A stretch of DNA of 64,000 nt from Ophelia neglecta. Taxonomy: Eukaryota. A program made the translations under genes and the position numbers. The notes under the pieces were generated by a model, which was given only the letters and a program-made list of their open reading frames with translations, was not told the origin of the DNA and made no database searches. The stretch lies in NCBI GenBank assembly GCA_965285935.1, contig OZ260664.1:85808001-85872000 (forward strand). The letters run 5' to 3'. Positions 9,201 through 56,000 of the stretch are shown here, in pieces (position 1 is the first letter of the stretch; each line of letters starts with the position of its first letter).

Positions 9201-10964
9201 GTCCTTAAACACACCTCACTTTATTGAATCAGATTACAAGGGCTTCTGCGTTCAATGTTGATCATAATCATGAACTGATTGACATGAACAAAATACACAT
9301 GACGATAGCTATCTGGCTTTGGCTAAAGTGTTATGCTTGATGCATACATGATGCACACAAGTCCAATAGTCCTGTTCAAACAGCCGGGTAATAAACACAC
9401 TGACTAGGGAACTTAAGAGTCTGAAATGTCAATAGTTTTCACTTGTGTAAACTCAGTTTAAGCATATTCATTAATTTACCTACTTCGTCGCAGCCTAATA
9501 CGTCTTATAAGAAATCCCAGAACAACATTAAACCGATTCAAAACTAATCACACATTATTATTATTTAGCGTTTTTAAGAATTAAATGTATAGTTAGATAG
9601 CTACATAAACTTAATGAAGATCAATTTCAAGGATGTGAGAAAACATGTATATATTCCTAAATTGGAAGTGACGTTGCATACATCAGGCGGACTAATAAAT
9701 AAAAATCTTGTAGTGTCGTTGAAATGCGATCCCCAAACCGACTACAGATAGTCAATATGGCCGACGCTCCGATTATATTTGGATGAAAAGATCAAAATAA
9801 TGCAGGGTGGGACCATCATCGGATGATAGCGTACAGAGATATTTCTGGTACATTAAAAAAGGATGAATTCCTTTTTTTGTTTTTCTTCCCAAAATTGTTT
9901 CATATACACATTTGCTTAAAACATATCACGCTACGGTCTAGTCACCGCAACCGGTATTTAATAAAAGAACCACTGCAGAGTTAAATTATGTTTTTTGCTT
10001 AATCGCCAAAGATATTGTATTTATGAATACAGTAACGTTTATATTTGCGCTGATTAATAGTATGCATCTGGCATTCGGTTATAACGAAATTTTGATACGA
10101 TATACGACCTGCTAGACACTCGTGCTCGAATCCCAGTTCGGAAAGTTTGAACTAAGTTTACACTATATGAGAATATTCATACGTTGACGTTTCAGATTCC
10201 AAGCTCGCTATTTAGGGTTCAAATGTTCAAAAAAGGTTCATGACGGTTCAAACTGGAATATCAGACCCAAGCTTTCTATGCGACTCTTTTTCTCAACCTA
10301 TCATTGTTGTCGGTGGTTAAACTTTTATCAATATTCCTTAGGAATGTTTCTATTCAAATATATACATAACATGTGTCCAAATACCGTCTCCGACTTTATT
10401 TACTACAAACAAAAAGATTGAAGTATACCATTCGCCAGGCAAGGCAAGGCAATCACATATTCCACTGTAAAAGTCTTCGTTCTATTCAAAAGCTGTGCGA
10501 TTTCAGGATGTCACTATATGTAATGTATTTTTGTGTGGAAATTAGTGATTGTGTGATTCATACTTTAAAGTATCCTTAAAATGATACTTGTTGTCGAGTT
10601 AGGGTATTTATGTTTGCCCAGCGGCGTGTAATTGCATAGAATACATTTGTTATTCAAATATGTTTATGAGAACCGTATTTGCATGTATTGTACCGTTTTA
10701 TTAGCTGTTGCGTTACATTTTAATTCGTACAATCATGTTCCCATTCATCACATTATTTAGAATAATTATTTTCAAATGTTCATAACACACTTAATTCGCC
10801 CATTCAACTGTCTATTTTCTTTCCAATCCACATATTCTTTGTTTCAATACCACATTGAGCTTTTCATCGTACTTAATGAAATCCCACTTTTCTGTATCAT
10901 ATTGCTTCTAAGTTTATGGGATGTAGTTGGTCTTTCGTGTTGCCATCCTGATTTTCCATACCAC

Positions 10965-13324
10965 CTAGTTACCGAGGAAAGCTTGTATCTTTACACTGAT
11001 GGTATTGAATGTTGGTCTCATATCAGGGTTGTAATTCCAACAGTCGCGCATAAGTAGGTACCTATATAACATTAAAAAAATCCAGGGAGGACTTGTAATT
11101 AAACCATTACAATGCAATGCTTGTGTCCAATAAGTTTGCTTGTCCTTTGGTGTACGAGTAATAACGTTGTACATAGGCTATTCAACATGGCTGTAAATTA
11201 CATACACTTCTCTCGGGTTGAGAATGCTTTTTGGTAGAATTGCGCCTCCGACAATTTCTTTAATAGCGTCGTTGCGGTGTTTATCCTTAAGAGGCTCACA
11301 TCCTACAGAAAGATATGTTTTAACTGGGAGTCCTTAACTCGGGCAGGCATAAATCGATGTTATTTTGCATAAAATATTAGTACATAATGAAGAAGCAAGG
11401 AGGGTAAAGTGATGGGTCGGTGATGAATATCCCATAAATTAACAACTTGATGTTGATACTCAAATCAAACATTGCATATGTCTAAACTTGTTCCCTGAAA
11501 TAATCAGCAAAATTTATTGAATCACATTTTATTACTTAGGAATTGCATAAAGCTTGAATTATTTATGTCCGTTTGCCCTGATCTTATAGAACTGTACGTG
11601 AGCGATCATGTTTTTCGTTTAATGATCGGGGCATGACACAAAATTAAATCTAGGCGTATTGAGCGCGTTCAAAATAATGATTATTAATATGTCTGGTATA
11701 CAATTAGTGAATAATAATTGGGGATTTACGGAACATATTGTTTGGTCGTTAAGAAATGCTTATGCTTTAGTTCCTACCATGATTGTACAACTGCCACATG
11801 ACTACTCCAAACGCCCAAACGTCGGCCGACTGCCCGTACATACCATAGCTCAAAGTCTCCGGTGGCAACAAACCAATGGGCCATGTGGTCATCTGCAAAA
11901 CGTCGTGTGAATACAAACAGCCAACATTGTGTTGATAATGTTATTTGGGGTCGCGATTGCTTTGTTATAAGAGATTATGTATTATTTGCTGGAGACAGAT
12001 AAAGTAAATCGTGCTTCCAAGGAGTAATGGCAGGTGTAGCTGGCTTTCCGCTCAACCTTTTAACCCAAATCTGATATTATCTGATAATATGAAGCAATTT
12101 GCTATTATACTGTAGCATTGAAATGTTTTTTATTAATTATTATTTTGTTACTGTAAGTTTATATTTACTATTTTTATTTCGAGTACGCATTGTAAATTTT
12201 GCATTATGTAACAGAAGCACAATTTGGCGCAGTATCGTGTCCAGTAAGAAATTGCATTTGATTTAAATATCTGTGGCATCCTATACAATGTTAAGAAAAT
12301 TGATAATATTAATATTGTTTTATATTATTGTTTGAGTATTTATTTGTATCCAGGGGAAATTTAAAGGAAAACTGAGTCATTTTCTATTTTACGTAAAGCG
12401 GCAATGGAAACAATTTATCGTGAAAATACATTGGCTCTTCCAAACGCAAATAAGTGAAATGATTTCGTGTTACATAATTGTTTTGGAACTCACATCGGAA
12501 TCAGACTTTTCACAGTAGTGTTTCTCAACATCTTCAGAATGCCAGAATCCTCTCAGTTGCACGTTCATATGATGGGTAAGTAAAACTTTCTTCAGACATA
12601 AGTTTGGATGAAGGAAGCTAGGCTAAACGTAAAGAAGGACACAATATACTTCAGTTACCGACAAAACTATATGATTAGATAGATCTGACTTATTATGTCA
12701 ACGTACCGTATGCGTGTGGAGGAAGTCCAGTGCCATTGCAATATCCAATGACCACTTCAATATGAAACTCTGGTAGCTTTCAACGCTGATGCTATTCACG
12801 ACAAAGCTTTCCAGGTCGCAGTTAGCGGCGTATTCGTAAAAATTGTAGAGATAATCTGAAATAGAGTTATAGCAGATCTAATTGGGTACAGTTATTAATA
12901 CTGAACAGATATTTGTGTACATTACATTGGTCAGCAGAAGCATTTAAATACCTGCTGTAATGGTATATCCTACAAATGGTATGATGTATGGTGAAGGTCC
13001 GCAGTGTACACATGCTTTCAACTCACTCGTGGCCAGCTTGTACTCGACAAGATTTCCAAAAAGATCGTCTGCGAATATTATAGACACATTAAGGATTAAT
13101 TTTTACAAAACGATATTCACCTTGATTAGCTAAACACGAAAATCTACCGGTACAAGTTTTTTTCGAAAAATATGAGCATACTAACTTCTTGTTCGCTTGA
13201 CAACAGCTGACGCTTGACGTGACTTTCGGTCAGCTGCTGTCCACACCACTTTGAAAACCTCATTGCTTATTTTCTCCCCAATGAGAAATGAATCAGGGGA
13301 TATAATCAGCAGGTCCGCATCCGA
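10965..13324 (-). CDS. Tyrosine-kinase-fold (pseudokinase) domain of gene A, 7 exons
   Basis: IGEKISNEVFKVVW (Gly loop missing), AVVK, SELKA, FLHPNLCLKKVLL (HRDLAARN position), VQLRGFW (KIxDFG position), WPIGLLPPET, DVWAFG, CWNYNPDMRPTF. Confidence 0.9.
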
Positions 13325-16300
13325 CTGCATATGAGGCAACAAAACATAGCTGGATCAATTTGCCGTAACATTACTACCAAAACTAATGGAACGTCAATAA
13401 AAAGTGAGCAATTCGTTTTCGGTTCACCCTGCTCTTAGTTATTCACTTCATAATTTCTTGGTCTTTGATGCACATGATAAATACACGATAAAATTGTATA
13501 AAATTTAATTACGTACCGCTTTTGTTTCAGCCAATCCAATATAAATGGCTTCGGAAATTCTCTTCTTAGAAATCTCCAGTTTTTCATAATCATTTTCGTT
13601 ATTTTGTGCATTTCCGAGCACAACCTCAATACAAGAAAAAACATGATGGATTTGGAATATAATAGAGATTAATTACATGCCTCTAAGGTTACTGAAATTA
13701 ATCGTTCCAAACTAACATCTTAATTAAACAAGGTAATATTGTGAACATACTTCAGCAGTATTTTCGTATACTCCATCCTTCTCAGGGCAAGTGGAACTCA
13801 TATCGATTATGTCAGCATAAACCGGCTCAGCGATAGCCGACACTTCATTTATCATATGAAATAAAGAGCTAGTATTTCTCTTTGCAGGCTAAGCATGGCA
13901 TTTTTGTAAAAATACACAACACGCAAACTTGCAATATGAAATATTTGCACCCAACTCACCAGGAGGCGGTGTTTTGCGTAAATGAAGAAATAGTAAGACT
14001 AAGAATATTATGATCGCAGCCAATGCCAAACTACCAAATATACCACCAAGTATCGCTCCTATTGGAGAATCTGAAAAATACAAAATTGTCAAACAATCGT
14101 TTGGTGGCATTCCTTCTTTGCTAAATACGTAAATTAAAACCCTTCTTTTTAAAAAAATGTTCTATCCTACCACTTGTATTAGAAGCTGATGGAGCAACTC
14201 TGCCATCTTGTTCATCACTGCCACCGGAAGCTAGCCCTGCGGCTTTCAGGAATGAATCCTCGTAGACGCATAACACAAATACATTGGTCTTCTGCAGATC
14301 AAAGTTTCCATGTCCAACTACATTTCTATCGGTTATATCGGAACCGCTGATATCATCGTTGATCGTCTTCCATCCACCACCACATACAGTAGACCTTTTC
14401 CTCCGAACACCCTGAGCCTGATGACGAAGCTCCAAGACATACGCCTCTCCTTGTACGTATTCCCAGGTCAGGTTTACGTAAGATGTGGTCAGCTCCATCC
14501 ATGTAATATGTACAATCGGAGTTGCTGAAGTGAAAATAGATACACTATTAGTATTGATTATTAAAGGTGCCATAACTATGTACGGATTCTTAACAGAAAA
14601 TAATGAATGTTTGAGCTTTTGACATTTTACACTGAATTGTTATGTAGACAAAATGTCGCAAATGTTAGATAGGCAATACATATATTATTTCCACAAACGG
14701 AATTTAAGCAACAGGGACGTTGATGAATGTCGGGAAGACGATTATATTTCCGCCCTGGAGTATAGCAGGTTCACATATCGATGATCGAATTACGTCGAGT
14801 GCACTTTAAGTGGTAGCCTTACTATTGATAAAGATCCATATGATAATACAATCATTTCAATAGCCAAAGTATTTCAATAGCCAAAGTATTTATTCGTCGC
14901 ACTTTAATCAAGGTTTTCAACTTAAAATGTCCACCCTTTCAACCGTTTCGTGGCAATGAGAAAGATGTGAAACTACATCTCAAGTTGTCTAGGTATCAGG
15001 GGAAAATTCCGAATTCCATGAAAGGGAATACAATTGGCCTTTACAATAAATACATACAACTCCAAGACAATTACTGGCAAAAAAACGTAGCATGTTCTAT
15101 GACAAGTCGACTTTCTCGTAGTATTGTACCTTTCTGACTCACCTCGTGTTGTTTGCTCTAAGTTGCTAGTTTCACTTCGGTCGCGCTGTTCACCATACTG
15201 ATTGTAGGCCACAACCTCGAACACATAACTAGTAGAGTTTGTAAGATCGGACACTCTGTTGGAAATCTTGTTATTGAGTAAACATTGTGTCATTATCCGC
15301 TCTTCTATAACCAACTCGCCTTCCTCAGTGCCATACAAAATAAAGAACATTTCCTCGTCTCCGCCATTGTATCCACATGTCCAACGGAGTGTAACGCTCA
15401 CAGATGTGTATTCCAGAACTTCGAGGTTTGTTGGTGGATGAGGCGGGCCCACCTCTACTAACTCGATTTTAAAATTGACATTATACTCGGCAGCCAGGAT
15501 GCTGTTCGATGCAGTACATGTGTAATTACCAAAGTGATCGTCTGTTACGTTTTGAATGGTCACTGTACTGTCCAAATAGGTCACATGTCCTGGGATTGCT
15601 TTTCCATTGAGTTGCCAGGAAAAGGATCCAGTTGGCTTCATACATACTTTACAGTCCAGAGTGGTTGAGTTACCAACAAATGCAGCATATATCTTATCAG
15701 CATTATTGCCTGCCCAAAGCGCAAAGTCTGCATAGAGGTAAATCAATTGGTTAAACTTTTGTCGGTGCTATATCTTAACATTTTAAGCGTATTCTATGAT
15801 TGAAATGATTGTTTAGGGAGTCTATAAAAACAACTACTGCACTGAACATGATATCGAAACAATGCATATAAAATATAAACGCTCAAAGCCTTCGATAAAG
15901 ATGGTGTTTAATACATTTATTTGAAAAAGTAATACTACGAGGTTTGACATTTATGGACACAACTCACAAAGCGTCTCCAGTGTAGTCGCTTTGGATGTGT
16001 CACTCCTTATTCCGTCTGTAGCTGTACATGTGTAATCCCCGTCAAACTGGGACACGTTGTTACACGTAACCCCATTCCGAGCTTGTTGAGGGCTGAGAGT
16101 GCTCGTGCAGCCGTAAGTCATCCCATAAGGAAAGGGGCCATCGGTTGTCGGGTGCCAGGCGTGTACAAACCGGAGATCATTTGTGATGTCAGATGACCCC
16201 CACTTCCATCTTACCCCGTCCAGATCGGGTTTTGCTGTCACGGTGCAACTAATGGATATTGAGGTATCATTGACAAGAAACAGTTTTGTCTGTGGAGAGG

Positions 16301-19300
16301 TCGGTCTGGTAAACTGGGGACCAACTACAATGGAAGGAATAGACGCCCATGAACGATTACTGATACATTTTAATATTCGGTCAGATGATCTGAAAGTATC
16401 ACGATACTTGTTCTAAATTATCCTACATTTGTCATTAGCATACGTATCACAGATTAGCAACCAAATCTATTAATATTTGGTGAATGACAGGCAGCATAGC
16501 TCTTTGTCATTTCAAGTACCGTCAGCGGATTTAATAGTATAGCTAATGCCCTACTAGTCTCAATGAGTATGATCTCATGTGAGAAATATATTTGCAAAGT
16601 GCAAAAGGGTTTTTCGTGCATGTGATCAGACAACATGGTTCCTGCATGACACATAGGTCCTTATCTTCTTGAATTCTATGTGCCCTGCCTTTGGGAGGGT
16701 TTATTCGTTAGGCTCACACGACGGTTGTGGGACCAGATAAAGACCAACTACCAGCCGACTTAGCTTAAAAGGTGGTTTAAATATGAGCCTTTCATATAAT
16801 TCCTGGTACTCCCCTATTTTTGACTCCTCTGAGATGCTCTTGAGTGCTGCATATCATCATTTACCGGTCAGGTTAAAACAACATGTTCGCCTTGAGCAAG
16901 CGAGATGGGTTGACAAAAATACCAATTCTTAAAGCATTTGTGATACAGAAATACCTGCTGTCTGGTATTTCGTAGCAATCTTCGGTGGACGACTCATCGG
17001 GAACAAGTCGGTTCTAACACTCAAGTGGCCAGGCGCCTCTCGACAAGTCGGCCTCGGTGAAGACCACTCTGTTCATGGAGGGTCATACCCCCCCCCCCCA
17101 TTGAAACTGGAGATTTTAAAAATTCCAAAGAAACAGTGCATATTATTAAATGTCGGATGATGTAGTATCGAATGAATACAGTAAACAGAGGAAGGTGTGA
17201 TGGTCAAAACGCACTTGTTTCATCAAATGACACGACTTTTCTGCCTAAACACATGGTTTATACGGGCCGTACGTGTTAAGACGCAACGGCTTTTCCAGAC
17301 AATACGGGCCGTACGTTGTGAAGCACCTACTGGTTGTACAAGAAGACCGTACCACCAGTGCTTACGCTCTGTTCACAACACACGGCCCGGCTGTGAGAAA
17401 TGTAATTGACAAGTGTTTTGCACGGCTTTTAAGTAGTAGCAACGTAGTAGATCGCGCATCGGTTTACCAAGACTGATCATTATAGTAAATTACACCAATA
17501 AGTAAGTCACATTACGCGCCCGTCAAACGCCACTTTTCCCTTATCATTACTTGGTTAATGTTCACAAATTTACTGTATGGGTACTTTACCGGTGTTACAG
17601 TTTTACTTAACGTGTACGGCCTGCGGTAGACCTGTGTTGAGACAGGAAAGCCATGTTATTTGTCGAAACAACTTGAATGCGTTTGGGAGGCATTACCTTA
17701 TATAGAAGCCGGCCCTCTCTTTTTAGCCACCGTGACCGGGACGTATTGGACAAATTACATAAAACATAACCAGATGGTTAAAATCAGTAGACCTACCGCC
17801 TGTTTACATTTACAGTGGCCCCTGTGCGTACATGCACACATCTATGCACGTACGGTGACGGAGGTTTTGTACAGCATAAGTGCGTGTTCATTGTTAGTTA
17901 GCCGTGTTTGTGAGGTACAAAACGCATTTGTTCACAACGCTTTGCTCTCTAAACACACGGCTTAAATAGGGGTCGCGCACTATATGAATAATATGTACTC
18001 AAATGTACACTGCAGGGGCGCTTCCTGTGCAAATGAATCATTCATTTTTTTTAGTAATTATCATAGCAGCTGGTCATTTGATTTATTATAATATCTTGTT
18101 CTGTAATTTGAGACAAAAAATAAAGTTTTTCTTCAAGAAATCAGTGAAATTGCATTTTTGTGGTAAAACTTGCTATAATAAGAAGTAGATGGAACTTACA
18201 GTGTTTAAAGGGGATAAACACTTTCAATTGCATATGCTGAAAAATTGAGCTGCTGAATGTGTGTTTAAACAATTTTATCCAATTGCTTATATAATTAGCT
18301 ACAAATTCATATTAATGAGATATCCCAACGGGTGTTTTCTTTTTTTTTCTTTTTTTTACTGTGCTATAGGCTAAAATGGACGCTTATGGCAAAATTCATG
18401 CCATGTTGTAACCAAAAGGCCTAGCGACCAACACTTTTAAGTGGGTATCTGGGGATGTGATACAAGTATTCGCCCAAAGACGGCCCTGTTGTTAAGAATT
18501 TCAAACACGGCTGGTTATTAAATCAAAATTTCCATGTCTGTATGCGTACGTATTATTATTATTTTAAGTCATAAGAAAGTTGTATAAGCTGAAGGTGTAT
18601 AGGCCTAGATTTAATGAGCAGACAGAGTAAGTGAACTGTATACAGTTTGCCAGATCGGCCGAAGTGACTGCTTGACCCTCTCGGTCTGTTCCACACTAAT
18701 AATAATAAGCAAAGCATGGGCCAACACTCAGAATGCCATCCAACAATTTGTTTGTACAAACACAATTTATCAAAGAGGGTCCAAACATATAATTCTTAAG
18801 TGTTTCTTATACTTACCGATGATGTCTAGTTGAGTATCTGCCGATACTTCTGATTTGAGCCGTCCAGTATATACCAGGTTAGAAGCCTGACAAGAGTATC
18901 CTCCGGCCTGATTAATATTTATGATGGAAATTTCAAGGGAGTTCTGATTGGTATCACCAGGGGGAGGTTGTACACCAAACCAGGTAAATACGTCTGCCTC
19001 TGGGTGACCTTTATCTGCCAGGTAACACGTCAAGGTCACATTGTCTCCAGCGTACACTTTCTGGTTTGAGAGCTGGAGGACCGGACGGGACGTCGAATCT
19101 GTGAATGGACAGAAAGGGGGTTGGTGTGAACCAGGCTTTCCTCGTGTAAATTGGCAGACGGCATATTGTACACATTTAGAGGTAATATATCTCATGAACG
19201 AACCCTATCATGAGTATTTCATAAGGTTTCCAGTGTGACATAGTTCTCTACGTCATTGTGGATTACTTGCCCGTAGAAAGGGAAAGACAATTGACTCAAC

Positions 19301-22300
19301 AATTTTAGGAAATGCAGATGGTGTGAAAACACTGTGCTAACAACCCAGAAACAAGGAGCAGTGAACATATTACTAGTTTGATTTGGTATAGATTGTCTTA
19401 GTCTTGACTTTCACTTGCTAGGAATATCCTTATCCTACCTCTATCAATATTAGATCAATATTATTTGTCGTACAAAATATGAATAATATAACAGGTATGG
19501 CATTTATTTCACGATAGTAATAAATTAATATAGCCCCGACTCATTTGTAAAAGCAGTGTGTGCCCTTCCTCTCGCCTGGAACACTTGGCCAGTGAAGGCC
19601 GGTGTTTATTAGACACATCAATAACATGAGACGCTCGGTTGTCGTAGCTAACCAGGGAGTTTGTTGTGTGATTCACGATAATAGCAAATACTTCTACTTA
19701 CATTGGACGTTAAGTTGGAGCTGTTGATTTCCTGCCGCCCCGATTCCGTTCATTCCGTTACACGTGACCGTCCCACTCGCCGATTTCCTGTCTTCTAGGT
19801 CGTTATTGGCCCATGTCAGAATAGAACCAGATACAGTTAGTAGATCACAGCTCCCTCCCTGGGTGTTGGTCATGCTATTCTGTTTAAGACCGTTGTCCTG
19901 TCCTGGAGACCAGGACCACTGGACTTCAGCAGCCGGCTTGGCGCTGTACGAACACTGGACGTCTACTGTATCATTGTTCAGGACAGTTAACTCGGCAGGT
20001 AAAGGTGTATTGACCATTAATGGTGGCACTGAAATACATCAATATCTTTGCTAAATCATGAAGTTATATGTTTGTTAAACACAATTATCGAAGCTTTTAA
20101 GAAAGAACAATTACCATTGACAATAAGCTGTACAGCCGCACTCCCGCCGACTCCCACCGTGTTATAAGGTGTACATGTGTAGGTGTCTTGCTGACATTCT
20201 GATGTCACGGTCACTGACAGTGTCCCGGCGTTGGTCTCTATAACACCACCTACTGACCTTGTCCAGTTCACACTAGATACAGGATTACCGGCGTTCCACG
20301 TGTCTCCAAGGTTACACATGAGAGATGCCACAGACTCCACTACGGCGGTCACAAGGCTGCTACCTGCCGTAGCCGACCCAGGTGGGACTGGAAACCAAAG
20401 TTATACAATTGATTTTCATCTAAAATGAAACACATATTAACAACAAAACTGGAGGCATTCCGTTGACGTTACTGCCGACGCCTGAAACGTGACTTAGCTT
20501 TGCCTTAATTAGTCTCATCTAACGTAGATATTCCTAGCCAAGTCTGTAGAGACTGTGAGAATAGCAACCCTATTTCTCGGTCCAGGGCTCGAACCTTGGT
20601 GAGGACCTATTTTTGTGTTTGTACATATAACCTTACATCGAATTACGTACAGTTTTGTGTTGATTATCTCTACTTGTCAATTGCACTATTTCTTTTAGTA
20701 AATGGAGCTTTACCAGCATTTGTCAAACTGAATGTGAAGCCTGTACGTCGCGCATAGTATGTGTTGCGGTGGTTTGGGCGGGTCGTTTCGTCATTCGTGT
20801 CATAGGTTCCCCGAACTGCGACAGCCGACGTTATTTTGATAAAAGGCGATAACATTGCATCCAGCGGGTAAAACATCAAAGACACACGAAACCGTGGACA
20901 AAACAACGTGAACGTCGAGGGGTATTCCAGTAGGTATTAGGCATGTTAGTTTTCAGGAAGCGCCTATATTTTGGGAGGATGACAATCGGGCTATTGGAAT
21001 AATAATATTATAGATTATTGGTTCTATATCAGTAAGCCCCTAATCTTTAAAATGTCTTCTGTTTTGAAACATACCGGGCAGCTTTACACACCGCGCGATA
21101 TGATTTTGATTACTCTATATACGTTCTTACCGTGTGTGATACAAACCTGAAAACAGTCCGAGCTGTAGTGAACAGGGATTATATTCCTAAAACAATGTCC
21201 CCGCGGTGACGGACGTAGCCACAAAAGTATCGCGATCTGCACTTTTCATAGAAGTTAAATGAAGACCGTACAAGTAAGGCGAAGTATGTAACAGGCGCAC
21301 GTCCTAGATTGGTGTAAACGTGTGGGTGTCCCCTGGCTTGGAAGTCCCCCTTGCTACATTTACTAATCATTACCCCCACTGGGACCTCTCGCTCTTTAAA
21401 CACTAGTATTTGAAATCTGACGGGGTATAAATCTTAGTAATCAGGGATCCGGCCTGCAAATAGTGATTTATTACGTCTCCCGGTGGCAAAACAGTTTTCT
21501 TGGGGCATTGTTATCCTATAGGTTTTGAGTTCTGGGACTGGTTAACCTTTTAAACCTAACACTCATTCACTCGATCTATTACCTTCAATTCCATTTGGGA
21601 ATGTACGTAAGATTAAAACTTCGCCACTTTGACATTAGATGGCCAGTGAAAAGCCATATGAAATATATCACTCTGTAATTAACAATATGTTATCCATCAG
21701 AAACCGTGAATTCCCGAAACGTTCATCTTAAAAACTTTATACATGCTGAAATATAGCAACAATCTTTATAAGGGTTCTTAATCAAAAAGCAGAACAGCCT
21801 GTCTAGCGGCACCTAGAGACAGTACAAAGAAGGAAAAGGGGTAATGTGAAATAAAGATTGGATTATTGTCGTATCTATAGGCATAAGAAAAGTCCCACTT
21901 ATGTCAGAGTATTTTTCAGGGCATGGCTTTACATGAAGGGCCCAAAGTTCACTTCTTGTGACATGAAAGGGTGTGTTTTTTATGGTTATTGTCTCCCCAG
22001 ATCCTTTTGTCTGTAAAAAGAGGCAGATCAATACATATTTAGAAACAGATTCATCCAGATTCAGGCATATTTTGTTTCACTATTATCGCTGTTTGTCAGG
22101 TTTCGGTGGATCTATGGATCCATTGTTGTCGCATAGTTACATGCATGGGTCTATATTTCGCACATCCCGTCACAACAGGCCCTATACGCCCCTCCCCACC
22201 ACCACAACCACTGCGACCGACCCCAACACCCACAGGGATCATCCCTCTCCCGTGTTCACCCTTCCCACTCCTTGCCCTCCTCCTTACTTCAGTACCCCCC

Positions 22301-25300
22301 CCACCCCACCCCCCGACCCCCCAACACACACTCATAGCCTCCGCTGGGCCCGTTTTCGAAAAGAAAATCACTGTGAAATAGACGTGGCATGTGGATGGAA
22401 TATATTTCAGCTTCTGACTTCACAAGAAAGAAGGCCATAGTTTGATGTGTGCAAGCGTAAACTGAATGCTACTACGGCAAAACAACTTCCGCTGTACAAA
22501 ATATATGAATATCCACATCACTAAATACTTCTGACATGTTGCGATGTTATATTCATCTGTGATGTGATTCAACAAATGTATACATACATTGCACATCTAA
22601 CATTGTTGTCGCCGATACAGTCACGTTATTAGCTCTAGCCACACACGTCACGTCTCCCAGACCATGTTTTCTCTGTTCGGCCGTCGTACCAGATTTCCAC
22701 CCCAGTGTTAAGGTAGTCCGTGTTAATATGTCACTAGGCCCCGTATTGGAAGTAGAGGTCTGGGTATCAAACAATCCCACCTGCTCAGAAGTCGTGGGTT
22801 CCCAGGACATTACAGCGGCGGGTTTAGAGTCCACAACACAATCTACGGCCAAGCTGTCGGTGTTCTTTAACGTTACTTTGTTTGTAACCGTCTGAGCAAA
22901 GGACGGAATGACTGAAAGAAAAACTAGCCGAACTAACCCGGCGAAATAATCTCCACTTACACAACAATTTGTTAGCATAATAGCACGAAAGACCACAATA
23001 TTGAATTGTAAAATGGTAATAACGTAGTGGACAGCGTACCATTAACGTTGAGTGTGACATCGCCTCCCGGACCGTCTCCAATGGCGTTTCTAATGTGACA
23101 CGTGTAGACATCTTCCTGTGTGACACTGTTCAATGTTATGGACAGGTTACCGTCATTAATAACATTGTACTGAGCGTCTTTACTCCGTGTCCACATGAAC
23201 TGCTGTCCGGCCGGGTTACCTCTGTCATACTGTCCAGTCCCAAACCCACACCTCAGTGTCACTTGGTCACCAATAACTGCTGTCACACTGGGTGTTAGTA
23301 CACGAGGTATCCCTGGTAAGTCTAGTAGCATACAGGGATTAACACATGATAAAGAAACATTTGAATTCACAGATGTATCTAAAAAGATTCAATATGTATG
23401 TTCTATTTCCAGACTATAAAACGAACACATTATATTGCAGTGAGTTGTTGCGTTTGCACTAGGCATATTATCAGTGGCGAAAAAAGACACGTTAACGAGC
23501 GGAAGAAAAGTTCATTGATAAACCAATGTAATAATGATTTTGTCTACAATGTGTTTCAAGTTTATGTATAATAAACAAACGTTAGTGTTTTGAGATGACG
23601 TTGATGAATCACAGGAAATATGACCCGCCCAGATTCTCGTTCAAACCAAACGCTTGGAAAATTATTAAACTTATATCAATACACACACTGTACATTCAAG
23701 ACAACATCATGGGTGGTCGTTCCATCCGCAGTCTCTCCTGTACAGGTGACGTCACCGGACGCTCCTTTCCTAAGGTTAAGATCAGAACCTGGCATCCAGC
23801 TCAGTGTCTGTGAGGATTGTGTCAGGAGTCCTCTGGTCCCGGTACTCGTACTGGGTAAAGACGCCGGAGAGAACACGTTTTGTTGGGCGGATGTTAAAGT
23901 CCAGGTTACCGTCGACTCAGGTCGGGCGTTGAAGGAGCACACAAACTGCCAGTTGTCGTCTGTGTTGATCACATTCGCTACACTTGGCACGGACGGATCA
24001 ATTCCTGGTTTTGCTGAATGAATAACGGAAACATTGATGTAAGCTGACCACCGTGGGGGGGGGGGGGGGGGGGTTACTCGGAAGTCACGCCAAACGAGAC
24101 GGATTCGATTCTTTTCTCATTAACACACTTAATTCACGCCAGTGCACTATATTTGTTATTATGTGGCGATATACAAGGAGTGTACCAAGGTGATCGTGGC
24201 CTATTGGTAAATATCATATAGTATGTGATGGGTACACGTACACTATGTTCCTGCTCACCTAGTGAAATAGTTTTATAATGGCGCCTACCTCTGACATCCA
24301 CCTCGATCTGAGCGCTGGGGCCCAGGCCGATGGTGTTCCCTGGTTTACAGCTGTATGTGTCTGTGTAGGTATAGTCTGTCAGTGTTAGAGACAGAGACCC
24401 ATCACTGCCGTCTCCGTCTACAGTCCCGCTTACCCGGGACCAGGTAAAGGTGGCTGGCGGGTTTCCGTCATCGTCTACTCTACACTCCAAAGTCACGACC
24501 GACCCCTCCAAGTTGGAGATCGGGGGAGTAACTGCTCTGGCTGCACCAGGGGGGTCTGGATAAAACAAAACTGTAGTGTTTAATAGGGACAGACACGTAA
24601 TAATAATATGAGGGACGTGTTGGAGTGAGGGGAGGGGGGGGGGGGGCATTGGTGTAGTAGCATCTTCTGTCAAAAGATATCAAGAAAGCAAATCCTCTCC
24701 TCCACTAATCCTCGCCTAGCTATATCCAATCCCATTTTTCATTAATTGATCACGTCCCTTATTTCGTCCCTTATTTCGGGACCACAGTTAAGACAACCTT
24801 CAGTGTTGGTTTTGTTGTTCATTGGCTCTCTAAAGAGGGTCTTAATACGATATATGGTGACAAGGTAGATTGATACATACATTGTACATTGAGAGTATAC
24901 ACATTTGAGTCTTTCTGTGCGGCCCGCGGTGCCGGTTGTTTGGCCCGACAGAACACTCCATCTCCCTGGCTGGCCCTACTCGGCCACAACTGGAGGACGG
25001 CGGTCGTTGAGTCTGATAGAGAGACGTTTTGTGTTATCTCCTGGACATTACCCTGTCCCAGGTCCCAATACCACCCCAGGGTGGCGGGGGGAGCGGATGG
25101 TGCCACCACACATGTCAGGGTAGTAGGCTGGTTCTCTCTCATGTCTATGATAGGCCCTGCGTGGTCCGTTATCACTGGCCTGCTGACCTCCACTGAAACA
25201 CAATCATGTATGATTTATCTTACGGAATGTTTGCATTAAATGTGCTTAATATAATAAAGGCGCGCTTACAGTATTTGGCTGGTTTCATTCATTCCTTACC

Positions 25301-27353
25301 GAACTGAGTTAATGTGGTAGCCTTGAAGGGATCGCCGTTATTGATTCCGTAGATACAGAACCATGTCGTCAAGTCTTTAGCCATGTCGATGTCGTTTATC
25401 TTTATCTCAAGGAAGAACTGGTCCCCTGAGGTATCACATTTTACATATTCGTATCTTCCATCCAGACAAGCTCCGTTTGTTAAGAACCCGCTGTTAAAAC
25501 TTATGTGACAATTTGCACATATATCATGTTCCTGCGACGGGTCACTTGAAAATCCAATCGTTATTTCGGGGACACTTGACAGTGGGCTGGCAACACATGT
25601 CAAGGTCACTTCATCCGTCGGCTCCACGTACTCTGGCAAACTTGTGAAGTTAATAGTTTCCGCCTCGACTCCACCTGTATAGTGAATCAAACGAATGATA
25701 GAAAATATTAATAGATCAGCTCTTAATAATAATAAGCCTTAGGGCACTCCTTTGAATCATTTGAATCAAATCGACCGATAAAAAGTAGAAGCTAAGGTTT
25801 GAATTGTGTTTTCAAATTCAACCTATATACGTTCATGTTTTAAAATGTCACAACACTTAAATTACGAATTCTTTGAGGGAAATAACTTGAGTTTAGATCT
25901 ACATTTGGATTCTAAAGGAACACACATTTTACCGAGTTTTTAAATTTCAGTCGAGACACTTGCACTTGAAAGTCTAGCCACTGGCTTTCTTAGCACAACT
26001 AGCATTTAGCTTAAGTATTGCTTTAAGGGTAGAAATATATTTATTTGGTGGAGTGAGGTTGTAAAACCCTTGTGAAGTGTCTTTGGTCAGCAAAGATGTG
26101 GCTTTTAATGGATGTGAGAGATTTGATGGTTGTGAAGTTGGAAAGGGGGTCCCGCTTATTAAATTACCATCATTGGAATTGGGAATAATGATATTCGAGC
26201 AAACGATAATAAATGCAAGAAGTCACATGATCTAGCTAACGTCATACGAGGTTCAAATGGCATAGCTATGTTGCAAACTCTGTCTGGGCATATGGGGAGA
26301 GATAAGAGACGGGGTGGAATGATTGGGTGGGATACATATGGGATGAGAGTCAGACGGTGGCAAGAAAGAGACGGGAGAGAAAGAGACGTGTTGTAAGCCA
26401 GAAAAAGCTAGGGAGAGCGAGCGAATAATCAAGTCAGAACCGAATGTCAGAGTATCGTTGGCTTACAATTTTAATCTGGAGGTCGCCTCTCTATCTCTCT
26501 CATAAATTATAACACATATTTAGAAAGCGGATCTTACACATATTTCCTGCAGTTGCGTATGTTCGTACCTGTTTGGAGAAACAGAATTAATTCGAAATCT
26601 TCGACTGCATTAACTTCCAAATTCAAACGAGCAATTTAACATATTATGATTATCCTTATCTGCTCATCGCAAAAACTTTTACAAATCCGCGGCACAGAAT
26701 ATAAAAAAAATACGGAATAGAAAATTTACAAACATTGTATCCTACTGAATCGTGGAGAAAACGTGGCAATTTTACCTGTTTTTGTTACACAGGGTAGCCA
26801 TGCCGCACCGAATAGACCATAAATAGCCAATAGCGGTGTTTGCCGCAATTCCTCAATTTCAGAACAGTACCATCACGTGTCTCAAAATTGTTTACTAATC
26901 ATAATCATGTTACCTAAATTATACTAATCATAATCAAGGCAATTCGGATATATTTCCTGCTTTGTTAGCCAATCACATGCCGGTTCGGCAAACTATATTA
27001 TTGCCCTTCGTGCTGTGGACAGATCAGGAGGTGGCACTGCATGGAATAATTACTATTTAGGTCACTGCAATATTTAAATATTGACTCCGCAGATTAAAAC
27101 TGCATTTTCCAAAATCACAGATAAGTATATTCCACCAATACTTCATCTAAGTTAAAAACACGACTTGGGGACCTATAGTGTCTCGAGAAGAGTCTATATA
27201 TTATCGAAGACTCTCTTTAATACTGCAAATATATAGTAATGGTAACTCACAATGGCTGATTCCGTGCATAAGTAAGTGGATGAAGACGTTCAGAAATATA
27301 TCAAGGAACAGCAGGTGGCCCTTTCGGACGCTAATATAATGTCCAAATGCCAT
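10965..27353 (-). CDS. Gene A: Ig/FN3 receptor tyrosine-kinase-like pseudokinase (SP, 11 Ig, 2 FN3, TM, ITAM-like motif, dead TK domain), about 1,770 aa, 23 coding exons
   Basis: Hand-spliced GT-AG exons with consistent phase: 27353-27251 (probable signal peptide, less certain), 25674-25300 (V-type Ig), 25192-24881, 24555-24289, 24013-23687, 23321-23040, 22911-22588, 20387-20115, 20028-19702, 19098-18817, 16324-15968 (Ig), 15727-15143 (Ig+FN3, WTCGYNGG...YVFEVVAYNQYG), 14524-14171 (degenerate FN3), 14070-13960 (TM IGAILGGIFGSLALAAIIIFLVLLFL), 13842-13751, 13624-13517 (juxtamembrane), 13324-13186, 13068-12952, 12855-12707, 12622-12494, 11892-11778, 11302-11206, 11061-10965 (kinase: DIAMALDFLH, PPET, ADVWAFGVVMWQL, CWNYNPDMRPTF). 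No internal stops. Confidence 0.9.
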
Positions 27354-53000: not shown

Positions 53001-56000
53001 ATTGTTTGCCATGGAGAACAAGTTCCTAGAACGGTTTTTGACTAACTTCTGTTCCTGCTAACACTGAACAAGAAGAGCCATATTCCAGGGAGAGCCACAA
53101 TAGCCATTGTCAGGGTAAAATAATGGAGCAGACTTTATGATTTTTTTTTCAGTCCGCGGGGATTGCAGTACATTGTTGTAAATAAAGTTGTTCGTCTGTC
53201 AATTTTCCAATTTTCTTCTTTTGGACACTAATCTTCTCATTGGAAAATGACGACACTCATTTTGATGACCCTCACTTTCATAATAACAAATAATATAATT
53301 GATTGAATAGCTAGCGTCTCTATATTCATCAGAATATATAAAAGAGCAAACCTATAATTAGTACCCCCAAAAAATGAAAGGATGAGGTTTTTTTTATAAT
53401 AAATGAAGATTTTGGTAGGATTGTATTTTATTGTAAAACGTATGAAGCGAATATGGACTGGCAGATGAATCTATGTATTCAAACAATTCAGTTGGCGCAA
53501 TGACCTGTTGTCATTATTTGTATAATGTGCTTCGAAAGTTAATTTTTTATTAAATATATTCTCGCTTTACAATGCCCCCCATGATAGCAAAATATATACA
53601 AAAAAGTGTCTTAATGATTCATCCTATTCATATAATAAGCAGATTGTCAAGAACACTTCAGCTGATTACGACTTATTGGACAAGGAAGCTAATAGACTGT
53701 CCAGGAATTTTTACGCCACCCTAGAGAACAAGGATAACAGTGTGGTACGCCACTTATACTATTATGTCATATATCATACTATTAACACGAATAGCACCAG
53801 TGTTTTCGAATTATCATATGTCATTCCATCAGGAATGAAATTGAATTTTCATGTCATAGGAGAATTTCAATTTTGTGTAACAGGATGCGCCTGCGGATTC
53901 TTTTATCGTCCCACCTGGCGCGTTCAGCTTGGGGAAACATTTACGTAAAGGAGCTTTCAAAGTCATTTGGTCAAGTGACAACTATAGTTCGAATGCTGCT
54001 GTTGTGAACCGAATAAATAGTGCGGTTTGATATAATTTCATCTCTAAACAATATTGGCCAGCAATGATACTGACATTTTTTAAGGCTAGCCGTACCCCAT
54101 TCACTTTCGCATTTTTCGTTACTTAATAAAACACAAGTTAAAGGGTTTAATCATTCACTTCGCCTGCGTATTCACGAAACACACAATACATTAAAATGAA
54201 TTACAAATGTGCCCAAACACACGGATGTTGTCCTCAATCATCGGAAATATAACTTTCCCAACAAGCCGACGATCCACAAAATTATAAAACCTATATGATA
54301 CGTAAATTAACTACATAATCTAATGTATTTCCCATGTTTCTTTATTCAGACAACCCGAGTGATGAGGACTACTTAATAGCATTTAATGGTTTGAAAGCAT
54401 TGTTAAAATGTGAATCCTCACTTTTTGTCAGTCGGTTAATCGGATTCACTATTACAAAGGGTATTGATAATGTTATTCATCTGCATTTTTTTCTACTTTA
54501 ATTTTGGTGGTTGAAGTTCGGTTCAAGAAAATTGTTTCCCTTTTCTTTCGTGCAGAGTTTCTATATGTTATGTCGGAATTCGCAAGCGAAGGTAGCCTTC
54601 ACAAGTTTGTCAAAACAGCACCGAATGTGTCCTCGTACGCATCCCATATACTGAAATGGTCAGGGAACATTGCTCAAGCCTTTGATTACCTTCATTCCGA
54701 ATCCGTAAGTATATTCAGGTAAATCATGTTGACTTATAATCACGGTATCTTGTGGCGCACTGGTATCTTTAATACATTTAAATTCTTAATAATATGTATT
54801 GTGTCCAAACTTTAAAAATAATAGTAATAAATGGTCATAGATAGTTTTCTTGGGCGGATGGGTACGGCTATACTATTATAAAATCTGTTTATGTAAATAC
54901 AAACTATCATCTATAAAAACATGTATTCTATTGTAGCAACCATTCCTCCATCCATGTTTATCATTATATCAAATACTGTTGGATTCTCATCTACGAGCCA
55001 AACTAAAAGGATTTTGGCTGGCTCAAGATGTGGTTGCTAAATATGCCAAGAAAGACGAGGTAAGGATCGAAATTTAGCGTCTGCATTCTTGTACCCCCCC
55101 CCCCTCAAGGTATTTCCCCTTCCCCACGTTATTTCCCTTCCCCGGCTGTGTCGAATAGCTAGACGAAAAGAGTTGAGGTAAATTGGTTACTAATCATCGG
55201 AGCCTATTTTTTTTGTATACGCTGTTTAATTTGAATATACACGCTATGTGTCAGGTTATTCCTATCATGTTTGTGTTTTTAGATCACAAAATGGCCAGTC
55301 CGTCACCTGCCCCCTGAAACTTTACTCTATGGTGTATACAACCAAGCATCCGACGTCTGGGCATACGGTATCCTGATTTGGCAAATATATAACAACGGTA
55401 AGACGGCATAATGTTTAATGCGAATTAAACAGGTCTGCGTTTGAATTTCAATAGGACGGATTAGAAAACCTACTTATATTCAAACGTAAACGGAGGAAGG
55501 TCATTCATATTAGCGCCAACTTAGAAAATATATGTGCGTGCGTGTAGTAGGCAGACCAAATGAATATGTATGCCCGTTTTAACAAATCTGCTGTATAACA
55601 ATAAGACGACATTCACAAGCGCATTTATTTACGAATATGTATTGGAATAACGGAAACTCATTCCTTTTTGGCATACTGGAAAACCTGATACGAAATTCGA
55701 AGGAAATACGAGATACACAGATACGAAAAATTAAGATTGAGTTGGATTATGACAGGGTAAGGGGTAGGGTTAAGCTAGCAACCTAACTAAACCATAACTT
55801 ACTTTATCCTTCACCCTAACCCTAACCTAGTCCATATGGCTACGTTTTAAACACCTCGTATCTCGTATCTGCGTCTCGTATCTGGTATTTCGTATCAGCT
55901 TTTCCAGTATGCCTTCCTTTTTTTATTGGTGAACTACAGTGTGATGTATTTATTTAGGGAGTATTCCTTATCATGCCACTAAAGAAAGTGAAGTTGTCAA

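What the first reader, a model, noticed from the sequence alone, without database searches (positions are those of the whole stretch)
13532..13588. ITAM-like YEKL-x11-YIGL motif just upstream of the dead kinase in gene A
Exon 13624-13517 encodes NENDYEKLEISKKRISEAIYIGL. The matching exon in gene C encodes DYDLL-x11-YATL. Both Tyr, both Leu, the preceding Asp and the spacing are conserved while most other residues differ, which points to selection. An 11-residue spacer is longer than the classical 6-8 but within the extended 6-12 definition.
Basis: partly seen in the sequence, partly recalled or inferred. Interest (0 to 1): 0.8.

Follow-up and report, generated by a model that had tools for sequence, protein, structure and literature searches.

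The report
Draper-type ITAM in receptor pseudokinases
A short exon just before a dead kinase domain encodes two YxxL tyrosine motifs exactly 11 residues apart, and all 26 copies of a tandemly expanded family of Ig-domain receptors in this invertebrate genome keep this pattern, so it is very probably a selected signalling motif of the kind that recruits Syk/Shark kinases, although no expression or binding data exist yet.

Summary
Exon 13624-13517 (minus strand; AG/GT sites; phase 0/0) encodes YEKL-x11-YIGL at 13588-13532. It lies between the transmembrane exon and a tyrosine-kinase-like domain. That domain is catalytically dead: HRD has become HPN and DFG has become GFW.

The motif is not a chance match. 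The gene belongs to about 28 tandem paralogs on the same chromosome, falling into four divergent subfamilies. All 26 copies that retain this exon have YxxL-x11-YxxL. In the alignment, the two Tyr and two Leu are the only invariant columns. Other positions are 0-29% identical. Indels occur only outside the motif. The invariant residues use different codons in different subfamilies, and pN/pS is about 0.3.

The 15-residue Tyr-to-Tyr distance equals that of the functional Drosophila Draper ITAM (Y934/Y949), which binds Shark. This genome encodes a Shark-type kinase (SH2-ankyrin-SH2-kinase).

Best reading (about 0.4): a Draper-type ITAM that lets a pseudokinase receptor pass signalling to Src and Shark kinases.

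Rivals are other SH2 readers, a regulatory juxtamembrane helix, and YxxΦ sorting signals.

No RNA data and no cross-species homologues could be found, so exon inclusion and phosphorylation remain untested.

The parts
13517..13624 (-). Gene A juxtamembrane exon 'JE' (108 nt, 36 codons, phase 0/0) carrying the double-YxxL motif
   Evidence: AG acceptor and GT donor are visible; translation. Homologous exons with the same splice sites and phase occur in 25 further paralogs. pN/pS is 0.27-0.38, and the exon is less diverged than its introns.
13532..13588 (-). The motif itself: YEKL - 11 residues - YIGL (Y13, L16, Y28, L31 of the exon)
   Evidence: These four residues are the only invariant columns in the four-subfamily alignment A1. 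They are encoded by different codons in different subfamilies.
13751..13842 (-). Gene A juxtamembrane exon 'JM1' with two further conserved tyrosines: YADI - x13 - YENT (a pYxN, Grb2-type consensus)
   Evidence: Splice sites and frame read. YxxI...YENT is conserved in subfamilies A, D and E, but the spacing varies (12, 13, or 18 in C).
13960..14070 (-). Gene A transmembrane exon (an uncharged hydrophobic stretch followed by R-K)
   Evidence: TM exons of the paralogs were found by tblastn.
13184..13324 (-). First kinase exon (degenerate Gly-loop; AVVK lysine kept). It begins about 10 residues after the motif exon ends. The 3' boundary is approximate.
   Evidence: Acceptor read; paralog alignment.
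12494..12622 (-). Pseudo-catalytic exon: HRD reads HPN, the catalytic-loop Asn is Lys, DFG reads GFW
   Evidence: All four subfamilies lack the HRD Asp and have GFW.
11778..11892 (-). Kinase exon covering the P+1 loop/APE region to helix F (WPxxxLPPET...DVWAFG)
   Evidence: Pfam PF07714 E=8.8e-09. The best matches in the Protein Data Bank are tyrosine kinases (ROR1, BTK, MuSK, Trk).
10968..11177 (-). Open frame holding the last kinase exon and the stop codon
   Evidence: Pfam PF07714, C-terminal end of the profile.
14124..25738 (-). Gene A ectodomain exons: about 10 Ig-like domains plus Ig+FN3 (14976-15767)
   Evidence: Pfam Ig_2/Ig_3/I-set/C2-set_2/fn3 matches.
53643..53744 (+). Gene C homologous exon (102 nt, phase 0/0); motif YDLL-x11-YATL at 53667-53723
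   Evidence: Gene C has Ig-like ectodomain exons that are not alignable to those of gene A, and the same pseudokinase features.

Best explanation
The exon encodes a selected, phosphotyrosine-based docking module of the ITAM type. It has the Draper-like geometry (YxxL-x11-YxxL, 15 residues Tyr to Tyr) and sits in the cytoplasmic juxtamembrane segment of a lineage-specific family of Ig-superfamily receptor pseudokinases. Proposed mechanism (inferred, not shown): ligand-driven clustering lets a Src-family or partner kinase phosphorylate both tyrosines. The receptor's own kinase domain cannot do this, because it lacks the HRD Asp and the DFG Asp. A tandem-SH2 protein then binds both phosphotyrosines together. 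The most likely reader is the Shark-type Syk-family kinase (SH2-ankyrin-SH2-kinase) encoded on contig C8, which would supply the missing catalytic output. The neighbouring exon adds YxxI and YENT (Grb2-type) sites, so the whole juxtamembrane region would act as a four-tyrosine scaffold. Shown here: the motif, its position, its conservation and purifying selection, the dead kinase, and the presence of a Shark-type reader. Inferred: phosphorylation, which protein reads the motif, and the activating output.
For: (1) All 26 copies of the exon in four subfamilies (A 4, C 3, D 12, E 7) keep Y-x-x-L-x11-Y-x-x-L. (2) In alignment A1 the only invariant columns are Y13, L16, Y28 and L31, and subfamilies are 22-25% identical overall. 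Non-motif identity between subfamilies is 0-29%. (3) Exon length varies (102-117 nt) through indels in the flanks, never between the tyrosines. By contrast, the tyrosine pair in the neighbouring exon has variable spacing of 12, 13 or 18. (4) The invariant residues show synonymous turnover: TAT/TAC for Tyr, CTG/TTG/TTA/CTC/CTT/CTA for Leu. pN/pS is 0.27-0.38, and the exon is less diverged than its introns. (5) Tyr is never replaced by Phe, and Leu is never replaced by Ile, Met or Val, although each is one nucleotide away. (6) Subfamily E has prolines at Y+2 and twice in the spacer, and its peptide is not predicted as one helix. The common denominator is therefore the linear motif and not a fold. 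(7) An acidic residue lies within 3 residues upstream of the first Tyr in all subfamilies. (8) The Draper ITAM tyrosines Y934/Y949 have the same 11-residue spacer and bind the Shark tandem SH2 directly; the paper defines the ITAM as YxxI/L-x6-12-YxxI/L (bioRxiv 10.1101/198986). (9) The genome encodes SH2-Ank-SH2-TK with FLxR arginines in both SH2 domains; its best named relatives are HTK16/Shark. (10) Every family member is a pseudokinase, so the tyrosines need an external kinase.
Against: No transcript evidence exists for the exon: the only runs holding the locus behave as DNA. There is no phosphorylation or binding evidence. The spacer lies outside the canonical 6-8 of vertebrate ITAMs. The second YxxL ends only about 10 residues before the kinase N-lobe begins, which is where many receptor tyrosine kinases carry regulatory juxtamembrane segments. 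The A-type peptide is predicted as one confident helix when folded alone, and subfamilies A, C and D also share R-[IL]-S and a hydrophobic periodicity in the spacer. Only four deep lineages give independent support, because copies within a subfamily are recent duplicates. No homologue was found outside this genome.
Confidence: 0.4

Rival explanations
1. The tyrosines are phosphotyrosine docking sites read by something other than a Syk/Shark kinase. One option is the tandem SH2 domains of an SHP-2/Corkscrew-type phosphatase, giving an inhibitory or bistable output. Another is two independent single-SH2 adaptors, such as a Src-family SH2 on the pY-E-x-L site.
For: The first site is always Y-[ED]-x-L, which suits Src-family and many other SH2 domains. 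Subfamily D has S at -2 of both tyrosines and subfamily E at -2 of the first, which is ITIM-like. The genome has at least 86 SH2-encoding matches, including large tandem SH2 clusters. The neighbouring exon already carries single-SH2-type sites (YENT).
Against: The ITIM -2 position is not conserved across subfamilies (A, N, S). Independent single sites would not need an invariant 11-residue spacing, and the neighbouring tyrosine pair shows that spacing does drift when it is unconstrained.
Confidence: 0.2
2. The segment is a structural or regulatory juxtamembrane helix that packs on the pseudokinase N-lobe, like the juxtamembrane helix of MET/TAM-type kinases or the Eph/KIT juxtamembrane latch. 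The Tyr and Leu residues would be buried contacts or regulatory switches, not docking sites for a tandem-SH2 protein.
For: AlphaFold2 folds the A-type exon alone as a helix over residues 6-35, with pLDDT 90-95 in the core. Hydrophobic positions 0, 3, 10, 14, 15 and 18 recur in subfamilies A, C and D. The motif ends about 10 residues before kinase strand beta-1. Conserved juxtamembrane helices are documented for receptor tyrosine kinases (PMC11398868, listed; title and abstract only were read).
Against: Subfamily E has three prolines in the region, and its peptide is predicted as coil between the tyrosines with low confidence, yet it keeps both YxxL and the spacing. A buried aromatic or aliphatic contact would usually tolerate F, I, M or V, and none occurs in 26 copies. 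The neighbouring position -1 of the second Tyr does vary (I, F, L, V), as a purely structural position would.
Confidence: 0.2
3. The two YxxL are tyrosine-based sorting signals (YxxΦ) recognised unphosphorylated by clathrin adaptor mu subunits. They would control endocytosis or lysosomal targeting of the receptor.
For: YxxL fits YxxΦ. The motifs lie in a membrane-proximal cytoplasmic segment of a single-pass receptor.
Against: One signal is enough for sorting, and nothing in that mechanism requires a fixed 11-residue distance between two signals. Φ normally tolerates I, M, F and V, but only Leu occurs here.
Confidence: 0.1
4. The pattern is chance or shared ancestry without function: it simply has not yet decayed.
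For: Copies within a subfamily are recent duplicates (3-7% exon divergence), so 26 copies are not 26 independent observations.
Against: Between subfamilies the rest of the exon has diverged to 0-29% identity, while the four motif residues and the spacing are untouched. Codons differ between subfamilies. pN/pS is well below 1. The prior for the exact pattern in a 36-mer is about 1e-4.
Confidence: 0.03

Closest known systems
Draper (Drosophila CED-1/MEGF10 family) ITAM, read by Shark after Src42A phosphorylation
   Same: Both have two YxxI/L motifs with an 11-residue spacer (Draper Y934 and Y949). Both lie in the cytoplasmic part of a single-pass invertebrate receptor without kinase activity of its own. 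A Shark-type SH2-ankyrin-SH2 kinase is present in the same genome. Both have further non-ITAM tyrosines nearby.
   Different: The ectodomain is Ig/FN3, not EMI/EGF. The motif sits directly in front of a pseudokinase domain and not in a free tail. No NPxY motif was seen. There is no sequence homology to Draper, so the resemblance is most simply convergent. Binding is untested here.
Canonical vertebrate ITAMs (CD3, Ig-alpha/beta, FcR-gamma, DAP12)
   Same: Shared features are the D/E-x0-2-YxxL...YxxL logic, a cytoplasmic location, and the expected Src-then-Syk relay.
   Different: The spacer is 11 and not 6-8. The motif is carried by the ligand-binding chain itself and not by a small adaptor paired through a charged transmembrane residue; the TM here is uncharged. 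It is encoded in one exon.
Receptor pseudokinases that signal as scaffolds (PTK7/Off-track, ErbB3, ROR/RYK, EphB6/EphA10)
   Same: Both are single-pass receptors with Ig-type ectodomains and a tyrosine-kinase fold that has lost catalytic residues. Output must come from partner kinases and docking tyrosines. ROR1 is the best match in the Protein Data Bank for one kinase exon.
   Different: The degenerate motifs differ: HP[NRSC]/HHK and GFW are shared by all members. The family is a tandem array of about 28 members with unrelated ectodomains in different subfamilies. No orthology to any named pseudokinase was established.
Juxtamembrane double-tyrosine switches of active receptor tyrosine kinases (Eph, KIT/PDGFR)
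   Same: Both have two conserved tyrosines a few residues upstream of the kinase N-lobe, able to act as both latch and SH2 docking site.
   Different: Those are autophosphorylated by their own active kinase and are not YxxL-x11-YxxL. Here the kinase is dead.
Expanded invertebrate IgSF receptor families with ITAM/ITIM tails (Hydractinia Alr family, oyster CgIgR, Botryllus receptors)
   Same: Both involve tandemly duplicated Ig-domain receptors with tyrosine motifs in the cytoplasmic part (papers listed; abstracts only were read).
   Different: None of those abstracts mentions a kinase or pseudokinase domain. No sequence relationship was tested.

Membership tests
ITAM (extended definition YxxI/L-x6-12-YxxI/L) | Two YxxL/I motifs | tested here: met
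   YEKL and YIGL in gene A. Both are YxxL in all 26 copies.
ITAM (extended definition YxxI/L-x6-12-YxxI/L) | Spacer of 6-12 residues | tested here: met
   The spacer is 11 in every copy. The definition is quoted from bioRxiv 10.1101/198986.
ITAM (canonical vertebrate definition) | Spacer of 6-8 residues | tested here: not met
   The spacer is 11.
ITAM (any definition) | Cytoplasmic location in a membrane receptor or adaptor | tested here: met
   The exon follows, in frame, the TM exon (hydrophobic stretch then R-K) and precedes the kinase-like domain. Topology is inferred from sequence.
ITAM (any definition) | Acidic residue(s) shortly upstream of the first tyrosine | tested here: met
   E at -3 and D at -1 in gene A; D at -1 in C; E at -1 in D; D at -3 in E. 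Three A-type paralogs have N at -1 but keep E at -3.
ITAM (any definition) | Both tyrosines phosphorylated by a Src-family kinase | not testable with these tools
   No phosphoproteomic or biochemical data are available.
ITAM (any definition) | Bidentate binding by the tandem SH2 of a Syk-family kinase | not testable with these tools
   A Shark-type kinase exists in the genome. The one complex prediction gave no verdict and is not evidence either way.
Draper/MEGF10/CED-1 receptor family | EMI plus EGF/Nimrod-repeat ectodomain and an NPxY motif | tested here: not met
   The ectodomain is Ig and FN3. No NPxY occurs in the juxtamembrane exons. Only the motif geometry is shared.
Receptor tyrosine pseudokinase | Tyrosine-kinase fold after a TM segment, with loss of catalytic residues | tested here: met
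   PF07714 matches. The HRD Asp and the DFG Asp are absent in all subfamilies; the VAIK Lys is kept in A and D and is Asn in C.
PTK7/CCK-4/Off-track | Orthology: seven Ig domains and family-specific kinase-domain signature | tested here: inconclusive
   The Ig count differs (about 10 plus FN3 in A, about 5 in C). The kinase exons hit generic tyrosine kinases, with ROR1 best. No orthology analysis was possible without a joined protein.
ITIM ([SILV]-x-Y-x-x-[ILV]) | S/I/L/V at position -2 of the tyrosine | tested here: not met
   The -2 residue is N or A in gene A, A or N in C, and S only in D (both sites) and E (first site). It is not a family-wide feature.
YxxΦ sorting signal | Y-x-x-bulky hydrophobic residue in a cytoplasmic, accessible segment | tested here: met
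   The pattern fits trivially. It does not explain the fixed spacing or the exclusive use of Leu.

The most novel reading that the evidence does not exclude
These genes define an undescribed class of invertebrate recognition receptors. In this class, variable Ig ectodomains are wired to a dead receptor-tyrosine-kinase domain that serves only as a scaffold, and signalling is handed to Src and Shark through a built-in Draper-type ITAM plus Grb2-type sites. Because the motif exon is phase 0/0 and a multiple of three in every subfamily, it could also be a cassette exon that switches each receptor between signalling and non-signalling isoforms, as Draper-I/II does.
Probability: 0.25. Interest if true: 0.8.

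Novelty: new variant of a known kind. Interest (0 to 1): 0.6.

Why it matters
ITAM signalling (Src, then ITAM, then Syk) is the core relay of vertebrate antigen and Fc receptors. Outside vertebrates it is established for very few receptors, with Draper as the paradigm.

A roughly 26-gene, tandemly expanded family of Ig-domain receptors that combines a dead kinase with a Draper-geometry ITAM would be a new architecture. It would bear on how immune-type receptors and receptor tyrosine kinases exchange parts, and on what receptor pseudokinases are for.

It would also supply a natural series of four divergent spacer sequences with identical geometry. That series is a ready-made test of whether the ankyrin-spaced tandem SH2 of Shark measures a 15-residue Tyr-to-Tyr distance.

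Tried and rejected
1. RNA evidence. The look-up of sequencing runs found only three runs of one sample, none on record as RNA. Laid on 10900-16000, they cover exons and introns evenly with no joints, so they behave as DNA. Exon inclusion is untested.

2. Complex prediction of the Shark N-terminal half (SH2-Ank-SH2) with the motif exon gave 'no answer' (score 0.00). It is not evidence either way.

3. Cross-species search.
- A profile of the best-conserved kinase exon was run against 1.84 billion representatives. The top 150 hits contained only generic tyrosine kinases. None had the family's WPxxxLPPET or GFW signatures in the right context, and none matched the motif-exon profile.
- A word search with the D-type exon inside its long open frame found no candidate.
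- The species' own Shark ORF (from its first ATG) is not in the collection by exact look-up, and its nearest relative there is only 65% identical. Absence of homologues therefore says little.

4. Pfam gave nothing for the motif exon, JM1 or the TM exon. A sequence search of the Protein Data Bank with the pseudo-catalytic exon gave only noise.

5. Candidate second tandem-SH2 locus. The locus at C8:14.985 Mb turned out to be a CSK-like kinase with a duplicated SH2 exon, not a tandem-SH2 reader. The 540-aa tandem-SH2 ORF on C5 is PI3K p85.

6. Draper orthologue. One EMI match was found (C12:19124482). I did not follow it to its tail, so whether this species' own Draper uses x11 is unknown.

7. 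Joined protein. A joined (spliced) protein was not built for any search or fold. No model of the whole cytoplasmic domain exists, so the helix-packing rival could not be tested properly.

8. Copies at 86.378 and 86.645 Mb (L056, L057) are 5'-truncated and lack the TM, JM and motif exons. They were left out of the count.

Full report
**What is there**

The window is part of a 110-Mb chromosome-scale contig (C7:85808001-85872000) of a 762-Mb animal genome. Gene A runs on the minus strand from about 25738 to 10968.
- Its ectodomain exons give about ten Ig-like matches plus one Ig+FN3 exon.
- The transmembrane exon (14070-13960) encodes an uncharged hydrophobic stretch followed by R-K.
- Two small juxtamembrane exons follow: JM1 (13842-13751) and the exon of the finding (13624-13517).
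- Seven exons of a tyrosine-kinase-like domain come next (Pfam PF07714; the best Protein Data Bank matches are ROR1, BTK, MuSK and Trk).

I read the junctions TM to JM1, JM1 to motif exon, and motif exon to first kinase exon directly. All are canonical AG/GT and in frame. Y13-E-K-L, an 11-residue spacer and Y28-I-G-L map exactly to 13588-13532. Gene C (plus strand) has the corresponding exon at 53643-53744, with YDLL-x11-YATL.

**The kinase is dead, in the whole family**

In gene A the catalytic loop reads H-P-N where active kinases have H-R-D. The last catalytic-loop Asn is Lys, and D-F-G reads G-F-W. tblastn against all paralogs shows that the HRD Asp is missing everywhere (HP[N/R/S/C] or HHK) and that GFW is universal. 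The VAIK Lys is kept in subfamilies A and D and is Asn in C. The loss of catalysis therefore predates the split of the subfamilies.

**The family**

Six-frame searches of the genome found the following.
- With the motif exon of gene A: three near-identical copies.
- With the motif exon of gene C: two near-identical copies and eleven weak matches.
- With a kinase exon: about 28 loci. Nearly all lie on C7 at 82.9 and 85.09-86.77 Mb, with one on the small contig C33.

I fetched the more distant members and mapped their exons. Four subfamilies emerge.
- A: 4 copies, N[D/N]-YEKL...YIGL.
- C: 3 copies, D-YDLL...YATL.
- D: 12 copies, E-YESL...YASL.
- E: 7 copies at 85.09-85.61 Mb, Q-YEPL...YESL.

One E copy (L050) has an in-frame stop inside the spacer. 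Two further loci (L056, L057) are 5'-truncated and lack the region. Every exon has a canonical acceptor and donor at the same relative position, is phase 0/0, and is 102-117 nt long.

**Is the pattern more than ancestry?**

Yes, on five grounds.
- In the 15-sequence alignment A1 the subfamilies are 22-25% identical, and the only invariant columns are the two Tyr and the two Leu.
- Outside those four residues, pairwise identity between subfamilies is 0-29%.
- Length differences between subfamilies all lie in the exon flanks, and the distance between the tyrosines is 11 in 26 of 26 copies. The other conserved tyrosine pair, in the neighbouring exon (YxxI...YENT), has spacers of 12, 13 and 18. 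Spacing therefore drifts in this very region when it is not constrained.
- The invariant residues use TAT or TAC for Tyr and five or six different Leu codons across subfamilies.
- Within subfamilies pN/pS of the exon is 0.27-0.38 in A, D and E. The exon is less diverged than 300 nt of flanking intron on each side; in D the figures are 0.053 against 0.181.

A random 36-mer has the exact pattern with probability about 1e-4. The exon is therefore coding and under purifying selection, and the selection is focused on YxxL-x11-YxxL.

**What kind of motif?**

The pattern fits the extended ITAM definition, YxxI/L-x6-12-YxxI/L, but not the canonical spacer of 6-8. The closest functional precedent has the same geometry. 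Draper's ITAM tyrosines are Y934 and Y949, which gives an 11-residue spacer. That ITAM is necessary and sufficient for direct binding of the Shark tandem SH2 after Src42A phosphorylation (bioRxiv 10.1101/198986; PMC4503800; PMC8092387).

This genome encodes a Shark-type kinase. An SH2 scan led to a 685-codon ORF on C8 with the order SH2, ankyrin repeats, SH2, tyrosine kinase.
- Its closest solved relatives are ZAP-70 and Syk.
- Its closest named relatives are HTK16/Shark proteins of annelids, brachiopods, amphioxus, insects and molluscs.
- Both SH2 domains keep the FLxR arginine. The first residues of the N-terminal SH2 must lie in an upstream exon.

Because the receptors cannot phosphorylate anything themselves, a relay through an external Src-type kinase and a tandem-SH2 kinase is a coherent mechanism. 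It is inferred and has not been shown.

**The main rival: a structural or regulatory juxtamembrane helix**

The motif ends about 10 residues before the kinase N-lobe. Subfamilies A, C and D share R-[IL]-S and a hydrophobic periodicity in the spacer. AlphaFold2 folds the A-type exon alone as one confident helix.

Three points argue against this being the shared function.
- Subfamily E has Pro at +2 of the first Tyr and two more prolines in the spacer. It lacks R-[IL]-S, and its peptide is predicted as coil between the tyrosines at low confidence. Yet it keeps both YxxL and the spacing.
- Neither Tyr is ever Phe, and neither Leu is ever Ile, Met or Val.
- The clearly 'structural' hydrophobic position before the second Tyr varies freely (I, F, L, V).

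Isolated-peptide folds are weak evidence. The proper test is a model of the spliced cytoplasmic domain. I left that out because joined models were not to be sent to the tools.

**Other rivals**

These are listed with odds in the report sections.
- A different SH2 reader, such as an SHP-2/Corkscrew-type tandem SH2 or single-SH2 adaptors.
- YxxΦ sorting signals.
- Neutral retention.

**Limits**

- There is no RNA run for this organism in the index. The three runs that hold the locus are one sample and behave as DNA.
- The second criterion, motif not conserved in other family members, was tested and is clearly not met.
- No homologue of the family was found outside this genome. However, the collection lacks this species' Shark ORF by exact look-up, and its nearest Shark relative there is only 65% identical. 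The absence is therefore uninformative.
- The complex prediction gave no verdict.

**Verdict**

I file it as working like a Draper-type ITAM and not as a member of the Draper family. I rate it as a new variant of a known kind: an ITAM-like module built into an expanded family of Ig-domain receptor pseudokinases.

Noticed in passing
window 13751-13842 (-); paralogs listed: The juxtamembrane exon upstream of the finding carries a second conserved tyrosine pair: Y[AD][DN]I - x12/13 - YENT (a pYxN, Grb2-type consensus). It occurs in subfamilies A, D and E. Subfamily C has YSVI-x18-YLT[MT], and YLTM fits the p85 YxxM consensus.
   Followed up: partly
G000:C7 82.9 and 85.09-86.77 Mb (loci L001-L058): About 28 paralogs of the receptor pseudokinase lie in a 1.7-Mb tandem array. 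A-type and C-type genes recur as neighbouring units (85.74, 85.82/85.86, 85.94/85.99, 86.06, 86.73 Mb), which suggests segmental duplication. The ectodomains of A and C are not alignable although the cytoplasmic parts are homologous.
   Followed up: partly
L050:4316-4432 (-) (G000:C7 about 85.4878 Mb): One E-type copy has an in-frame stop in the spacer of the motif (YEPL-stop-ML...) and a stop in its kinase exon. It is probably a pseudogene.
   Followed up: no
L056, L057 (G000:C7 86.368-86.378 and 86.635-86.645 Mb, + strand): These D-like copies are 5'-truncated. They retain only kinase exons and lack the TM, JM and motif exons.
   Followed up: partly
L059:942-2996 (-) = G000:C8:29348741-29350795: A Shark/HTK16-type kinase (SH2-ankyrin-SH2-TK) is encoded almost entirely in one 685-codon open frame. 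The start of the first SH2 must lie in an upstream exon.
   Followed up: partly
L061 (G000:C8:14976600-14986599, - strand): A CSK-like tyrosine kinase gene has two nearly identical SH2 exons about 1 kb apart. This may be a tandem exon duplication or mutually exclusive exons.
   Followed up: no
G000:C2:96.40-96.66 Mb; C12:55.50-55.53 Mb; C5:3.28-3.61 Mb: Dense clusters of SH2-domain matches (dozens of exons or ORFs) suggest lineage-specific expansions of SH2 genes.
   Followed up: no
window 30357-34000 (+): An UNC-93-like gene lies between genes A and C (Pfam PF05978 on 31336-31980).
   Followed up: partly
window 35293-39284 (-): A non-LTR retrotransposon has long open frames: an AP-endonuclease domain (37400-39028) and a reverse transcriptase (35293-37437).
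   Followed up: partly
window 13565, 13568, 13574, 13591: Contigs of the DNA runs show alternative letters inside the motif exon. At least the one at 13591 matches the A-type paralogs (D to N before the first Tyr). They may be paralog cross-mapping or alleles. None touches the four invariant residues.
   Followed up: no
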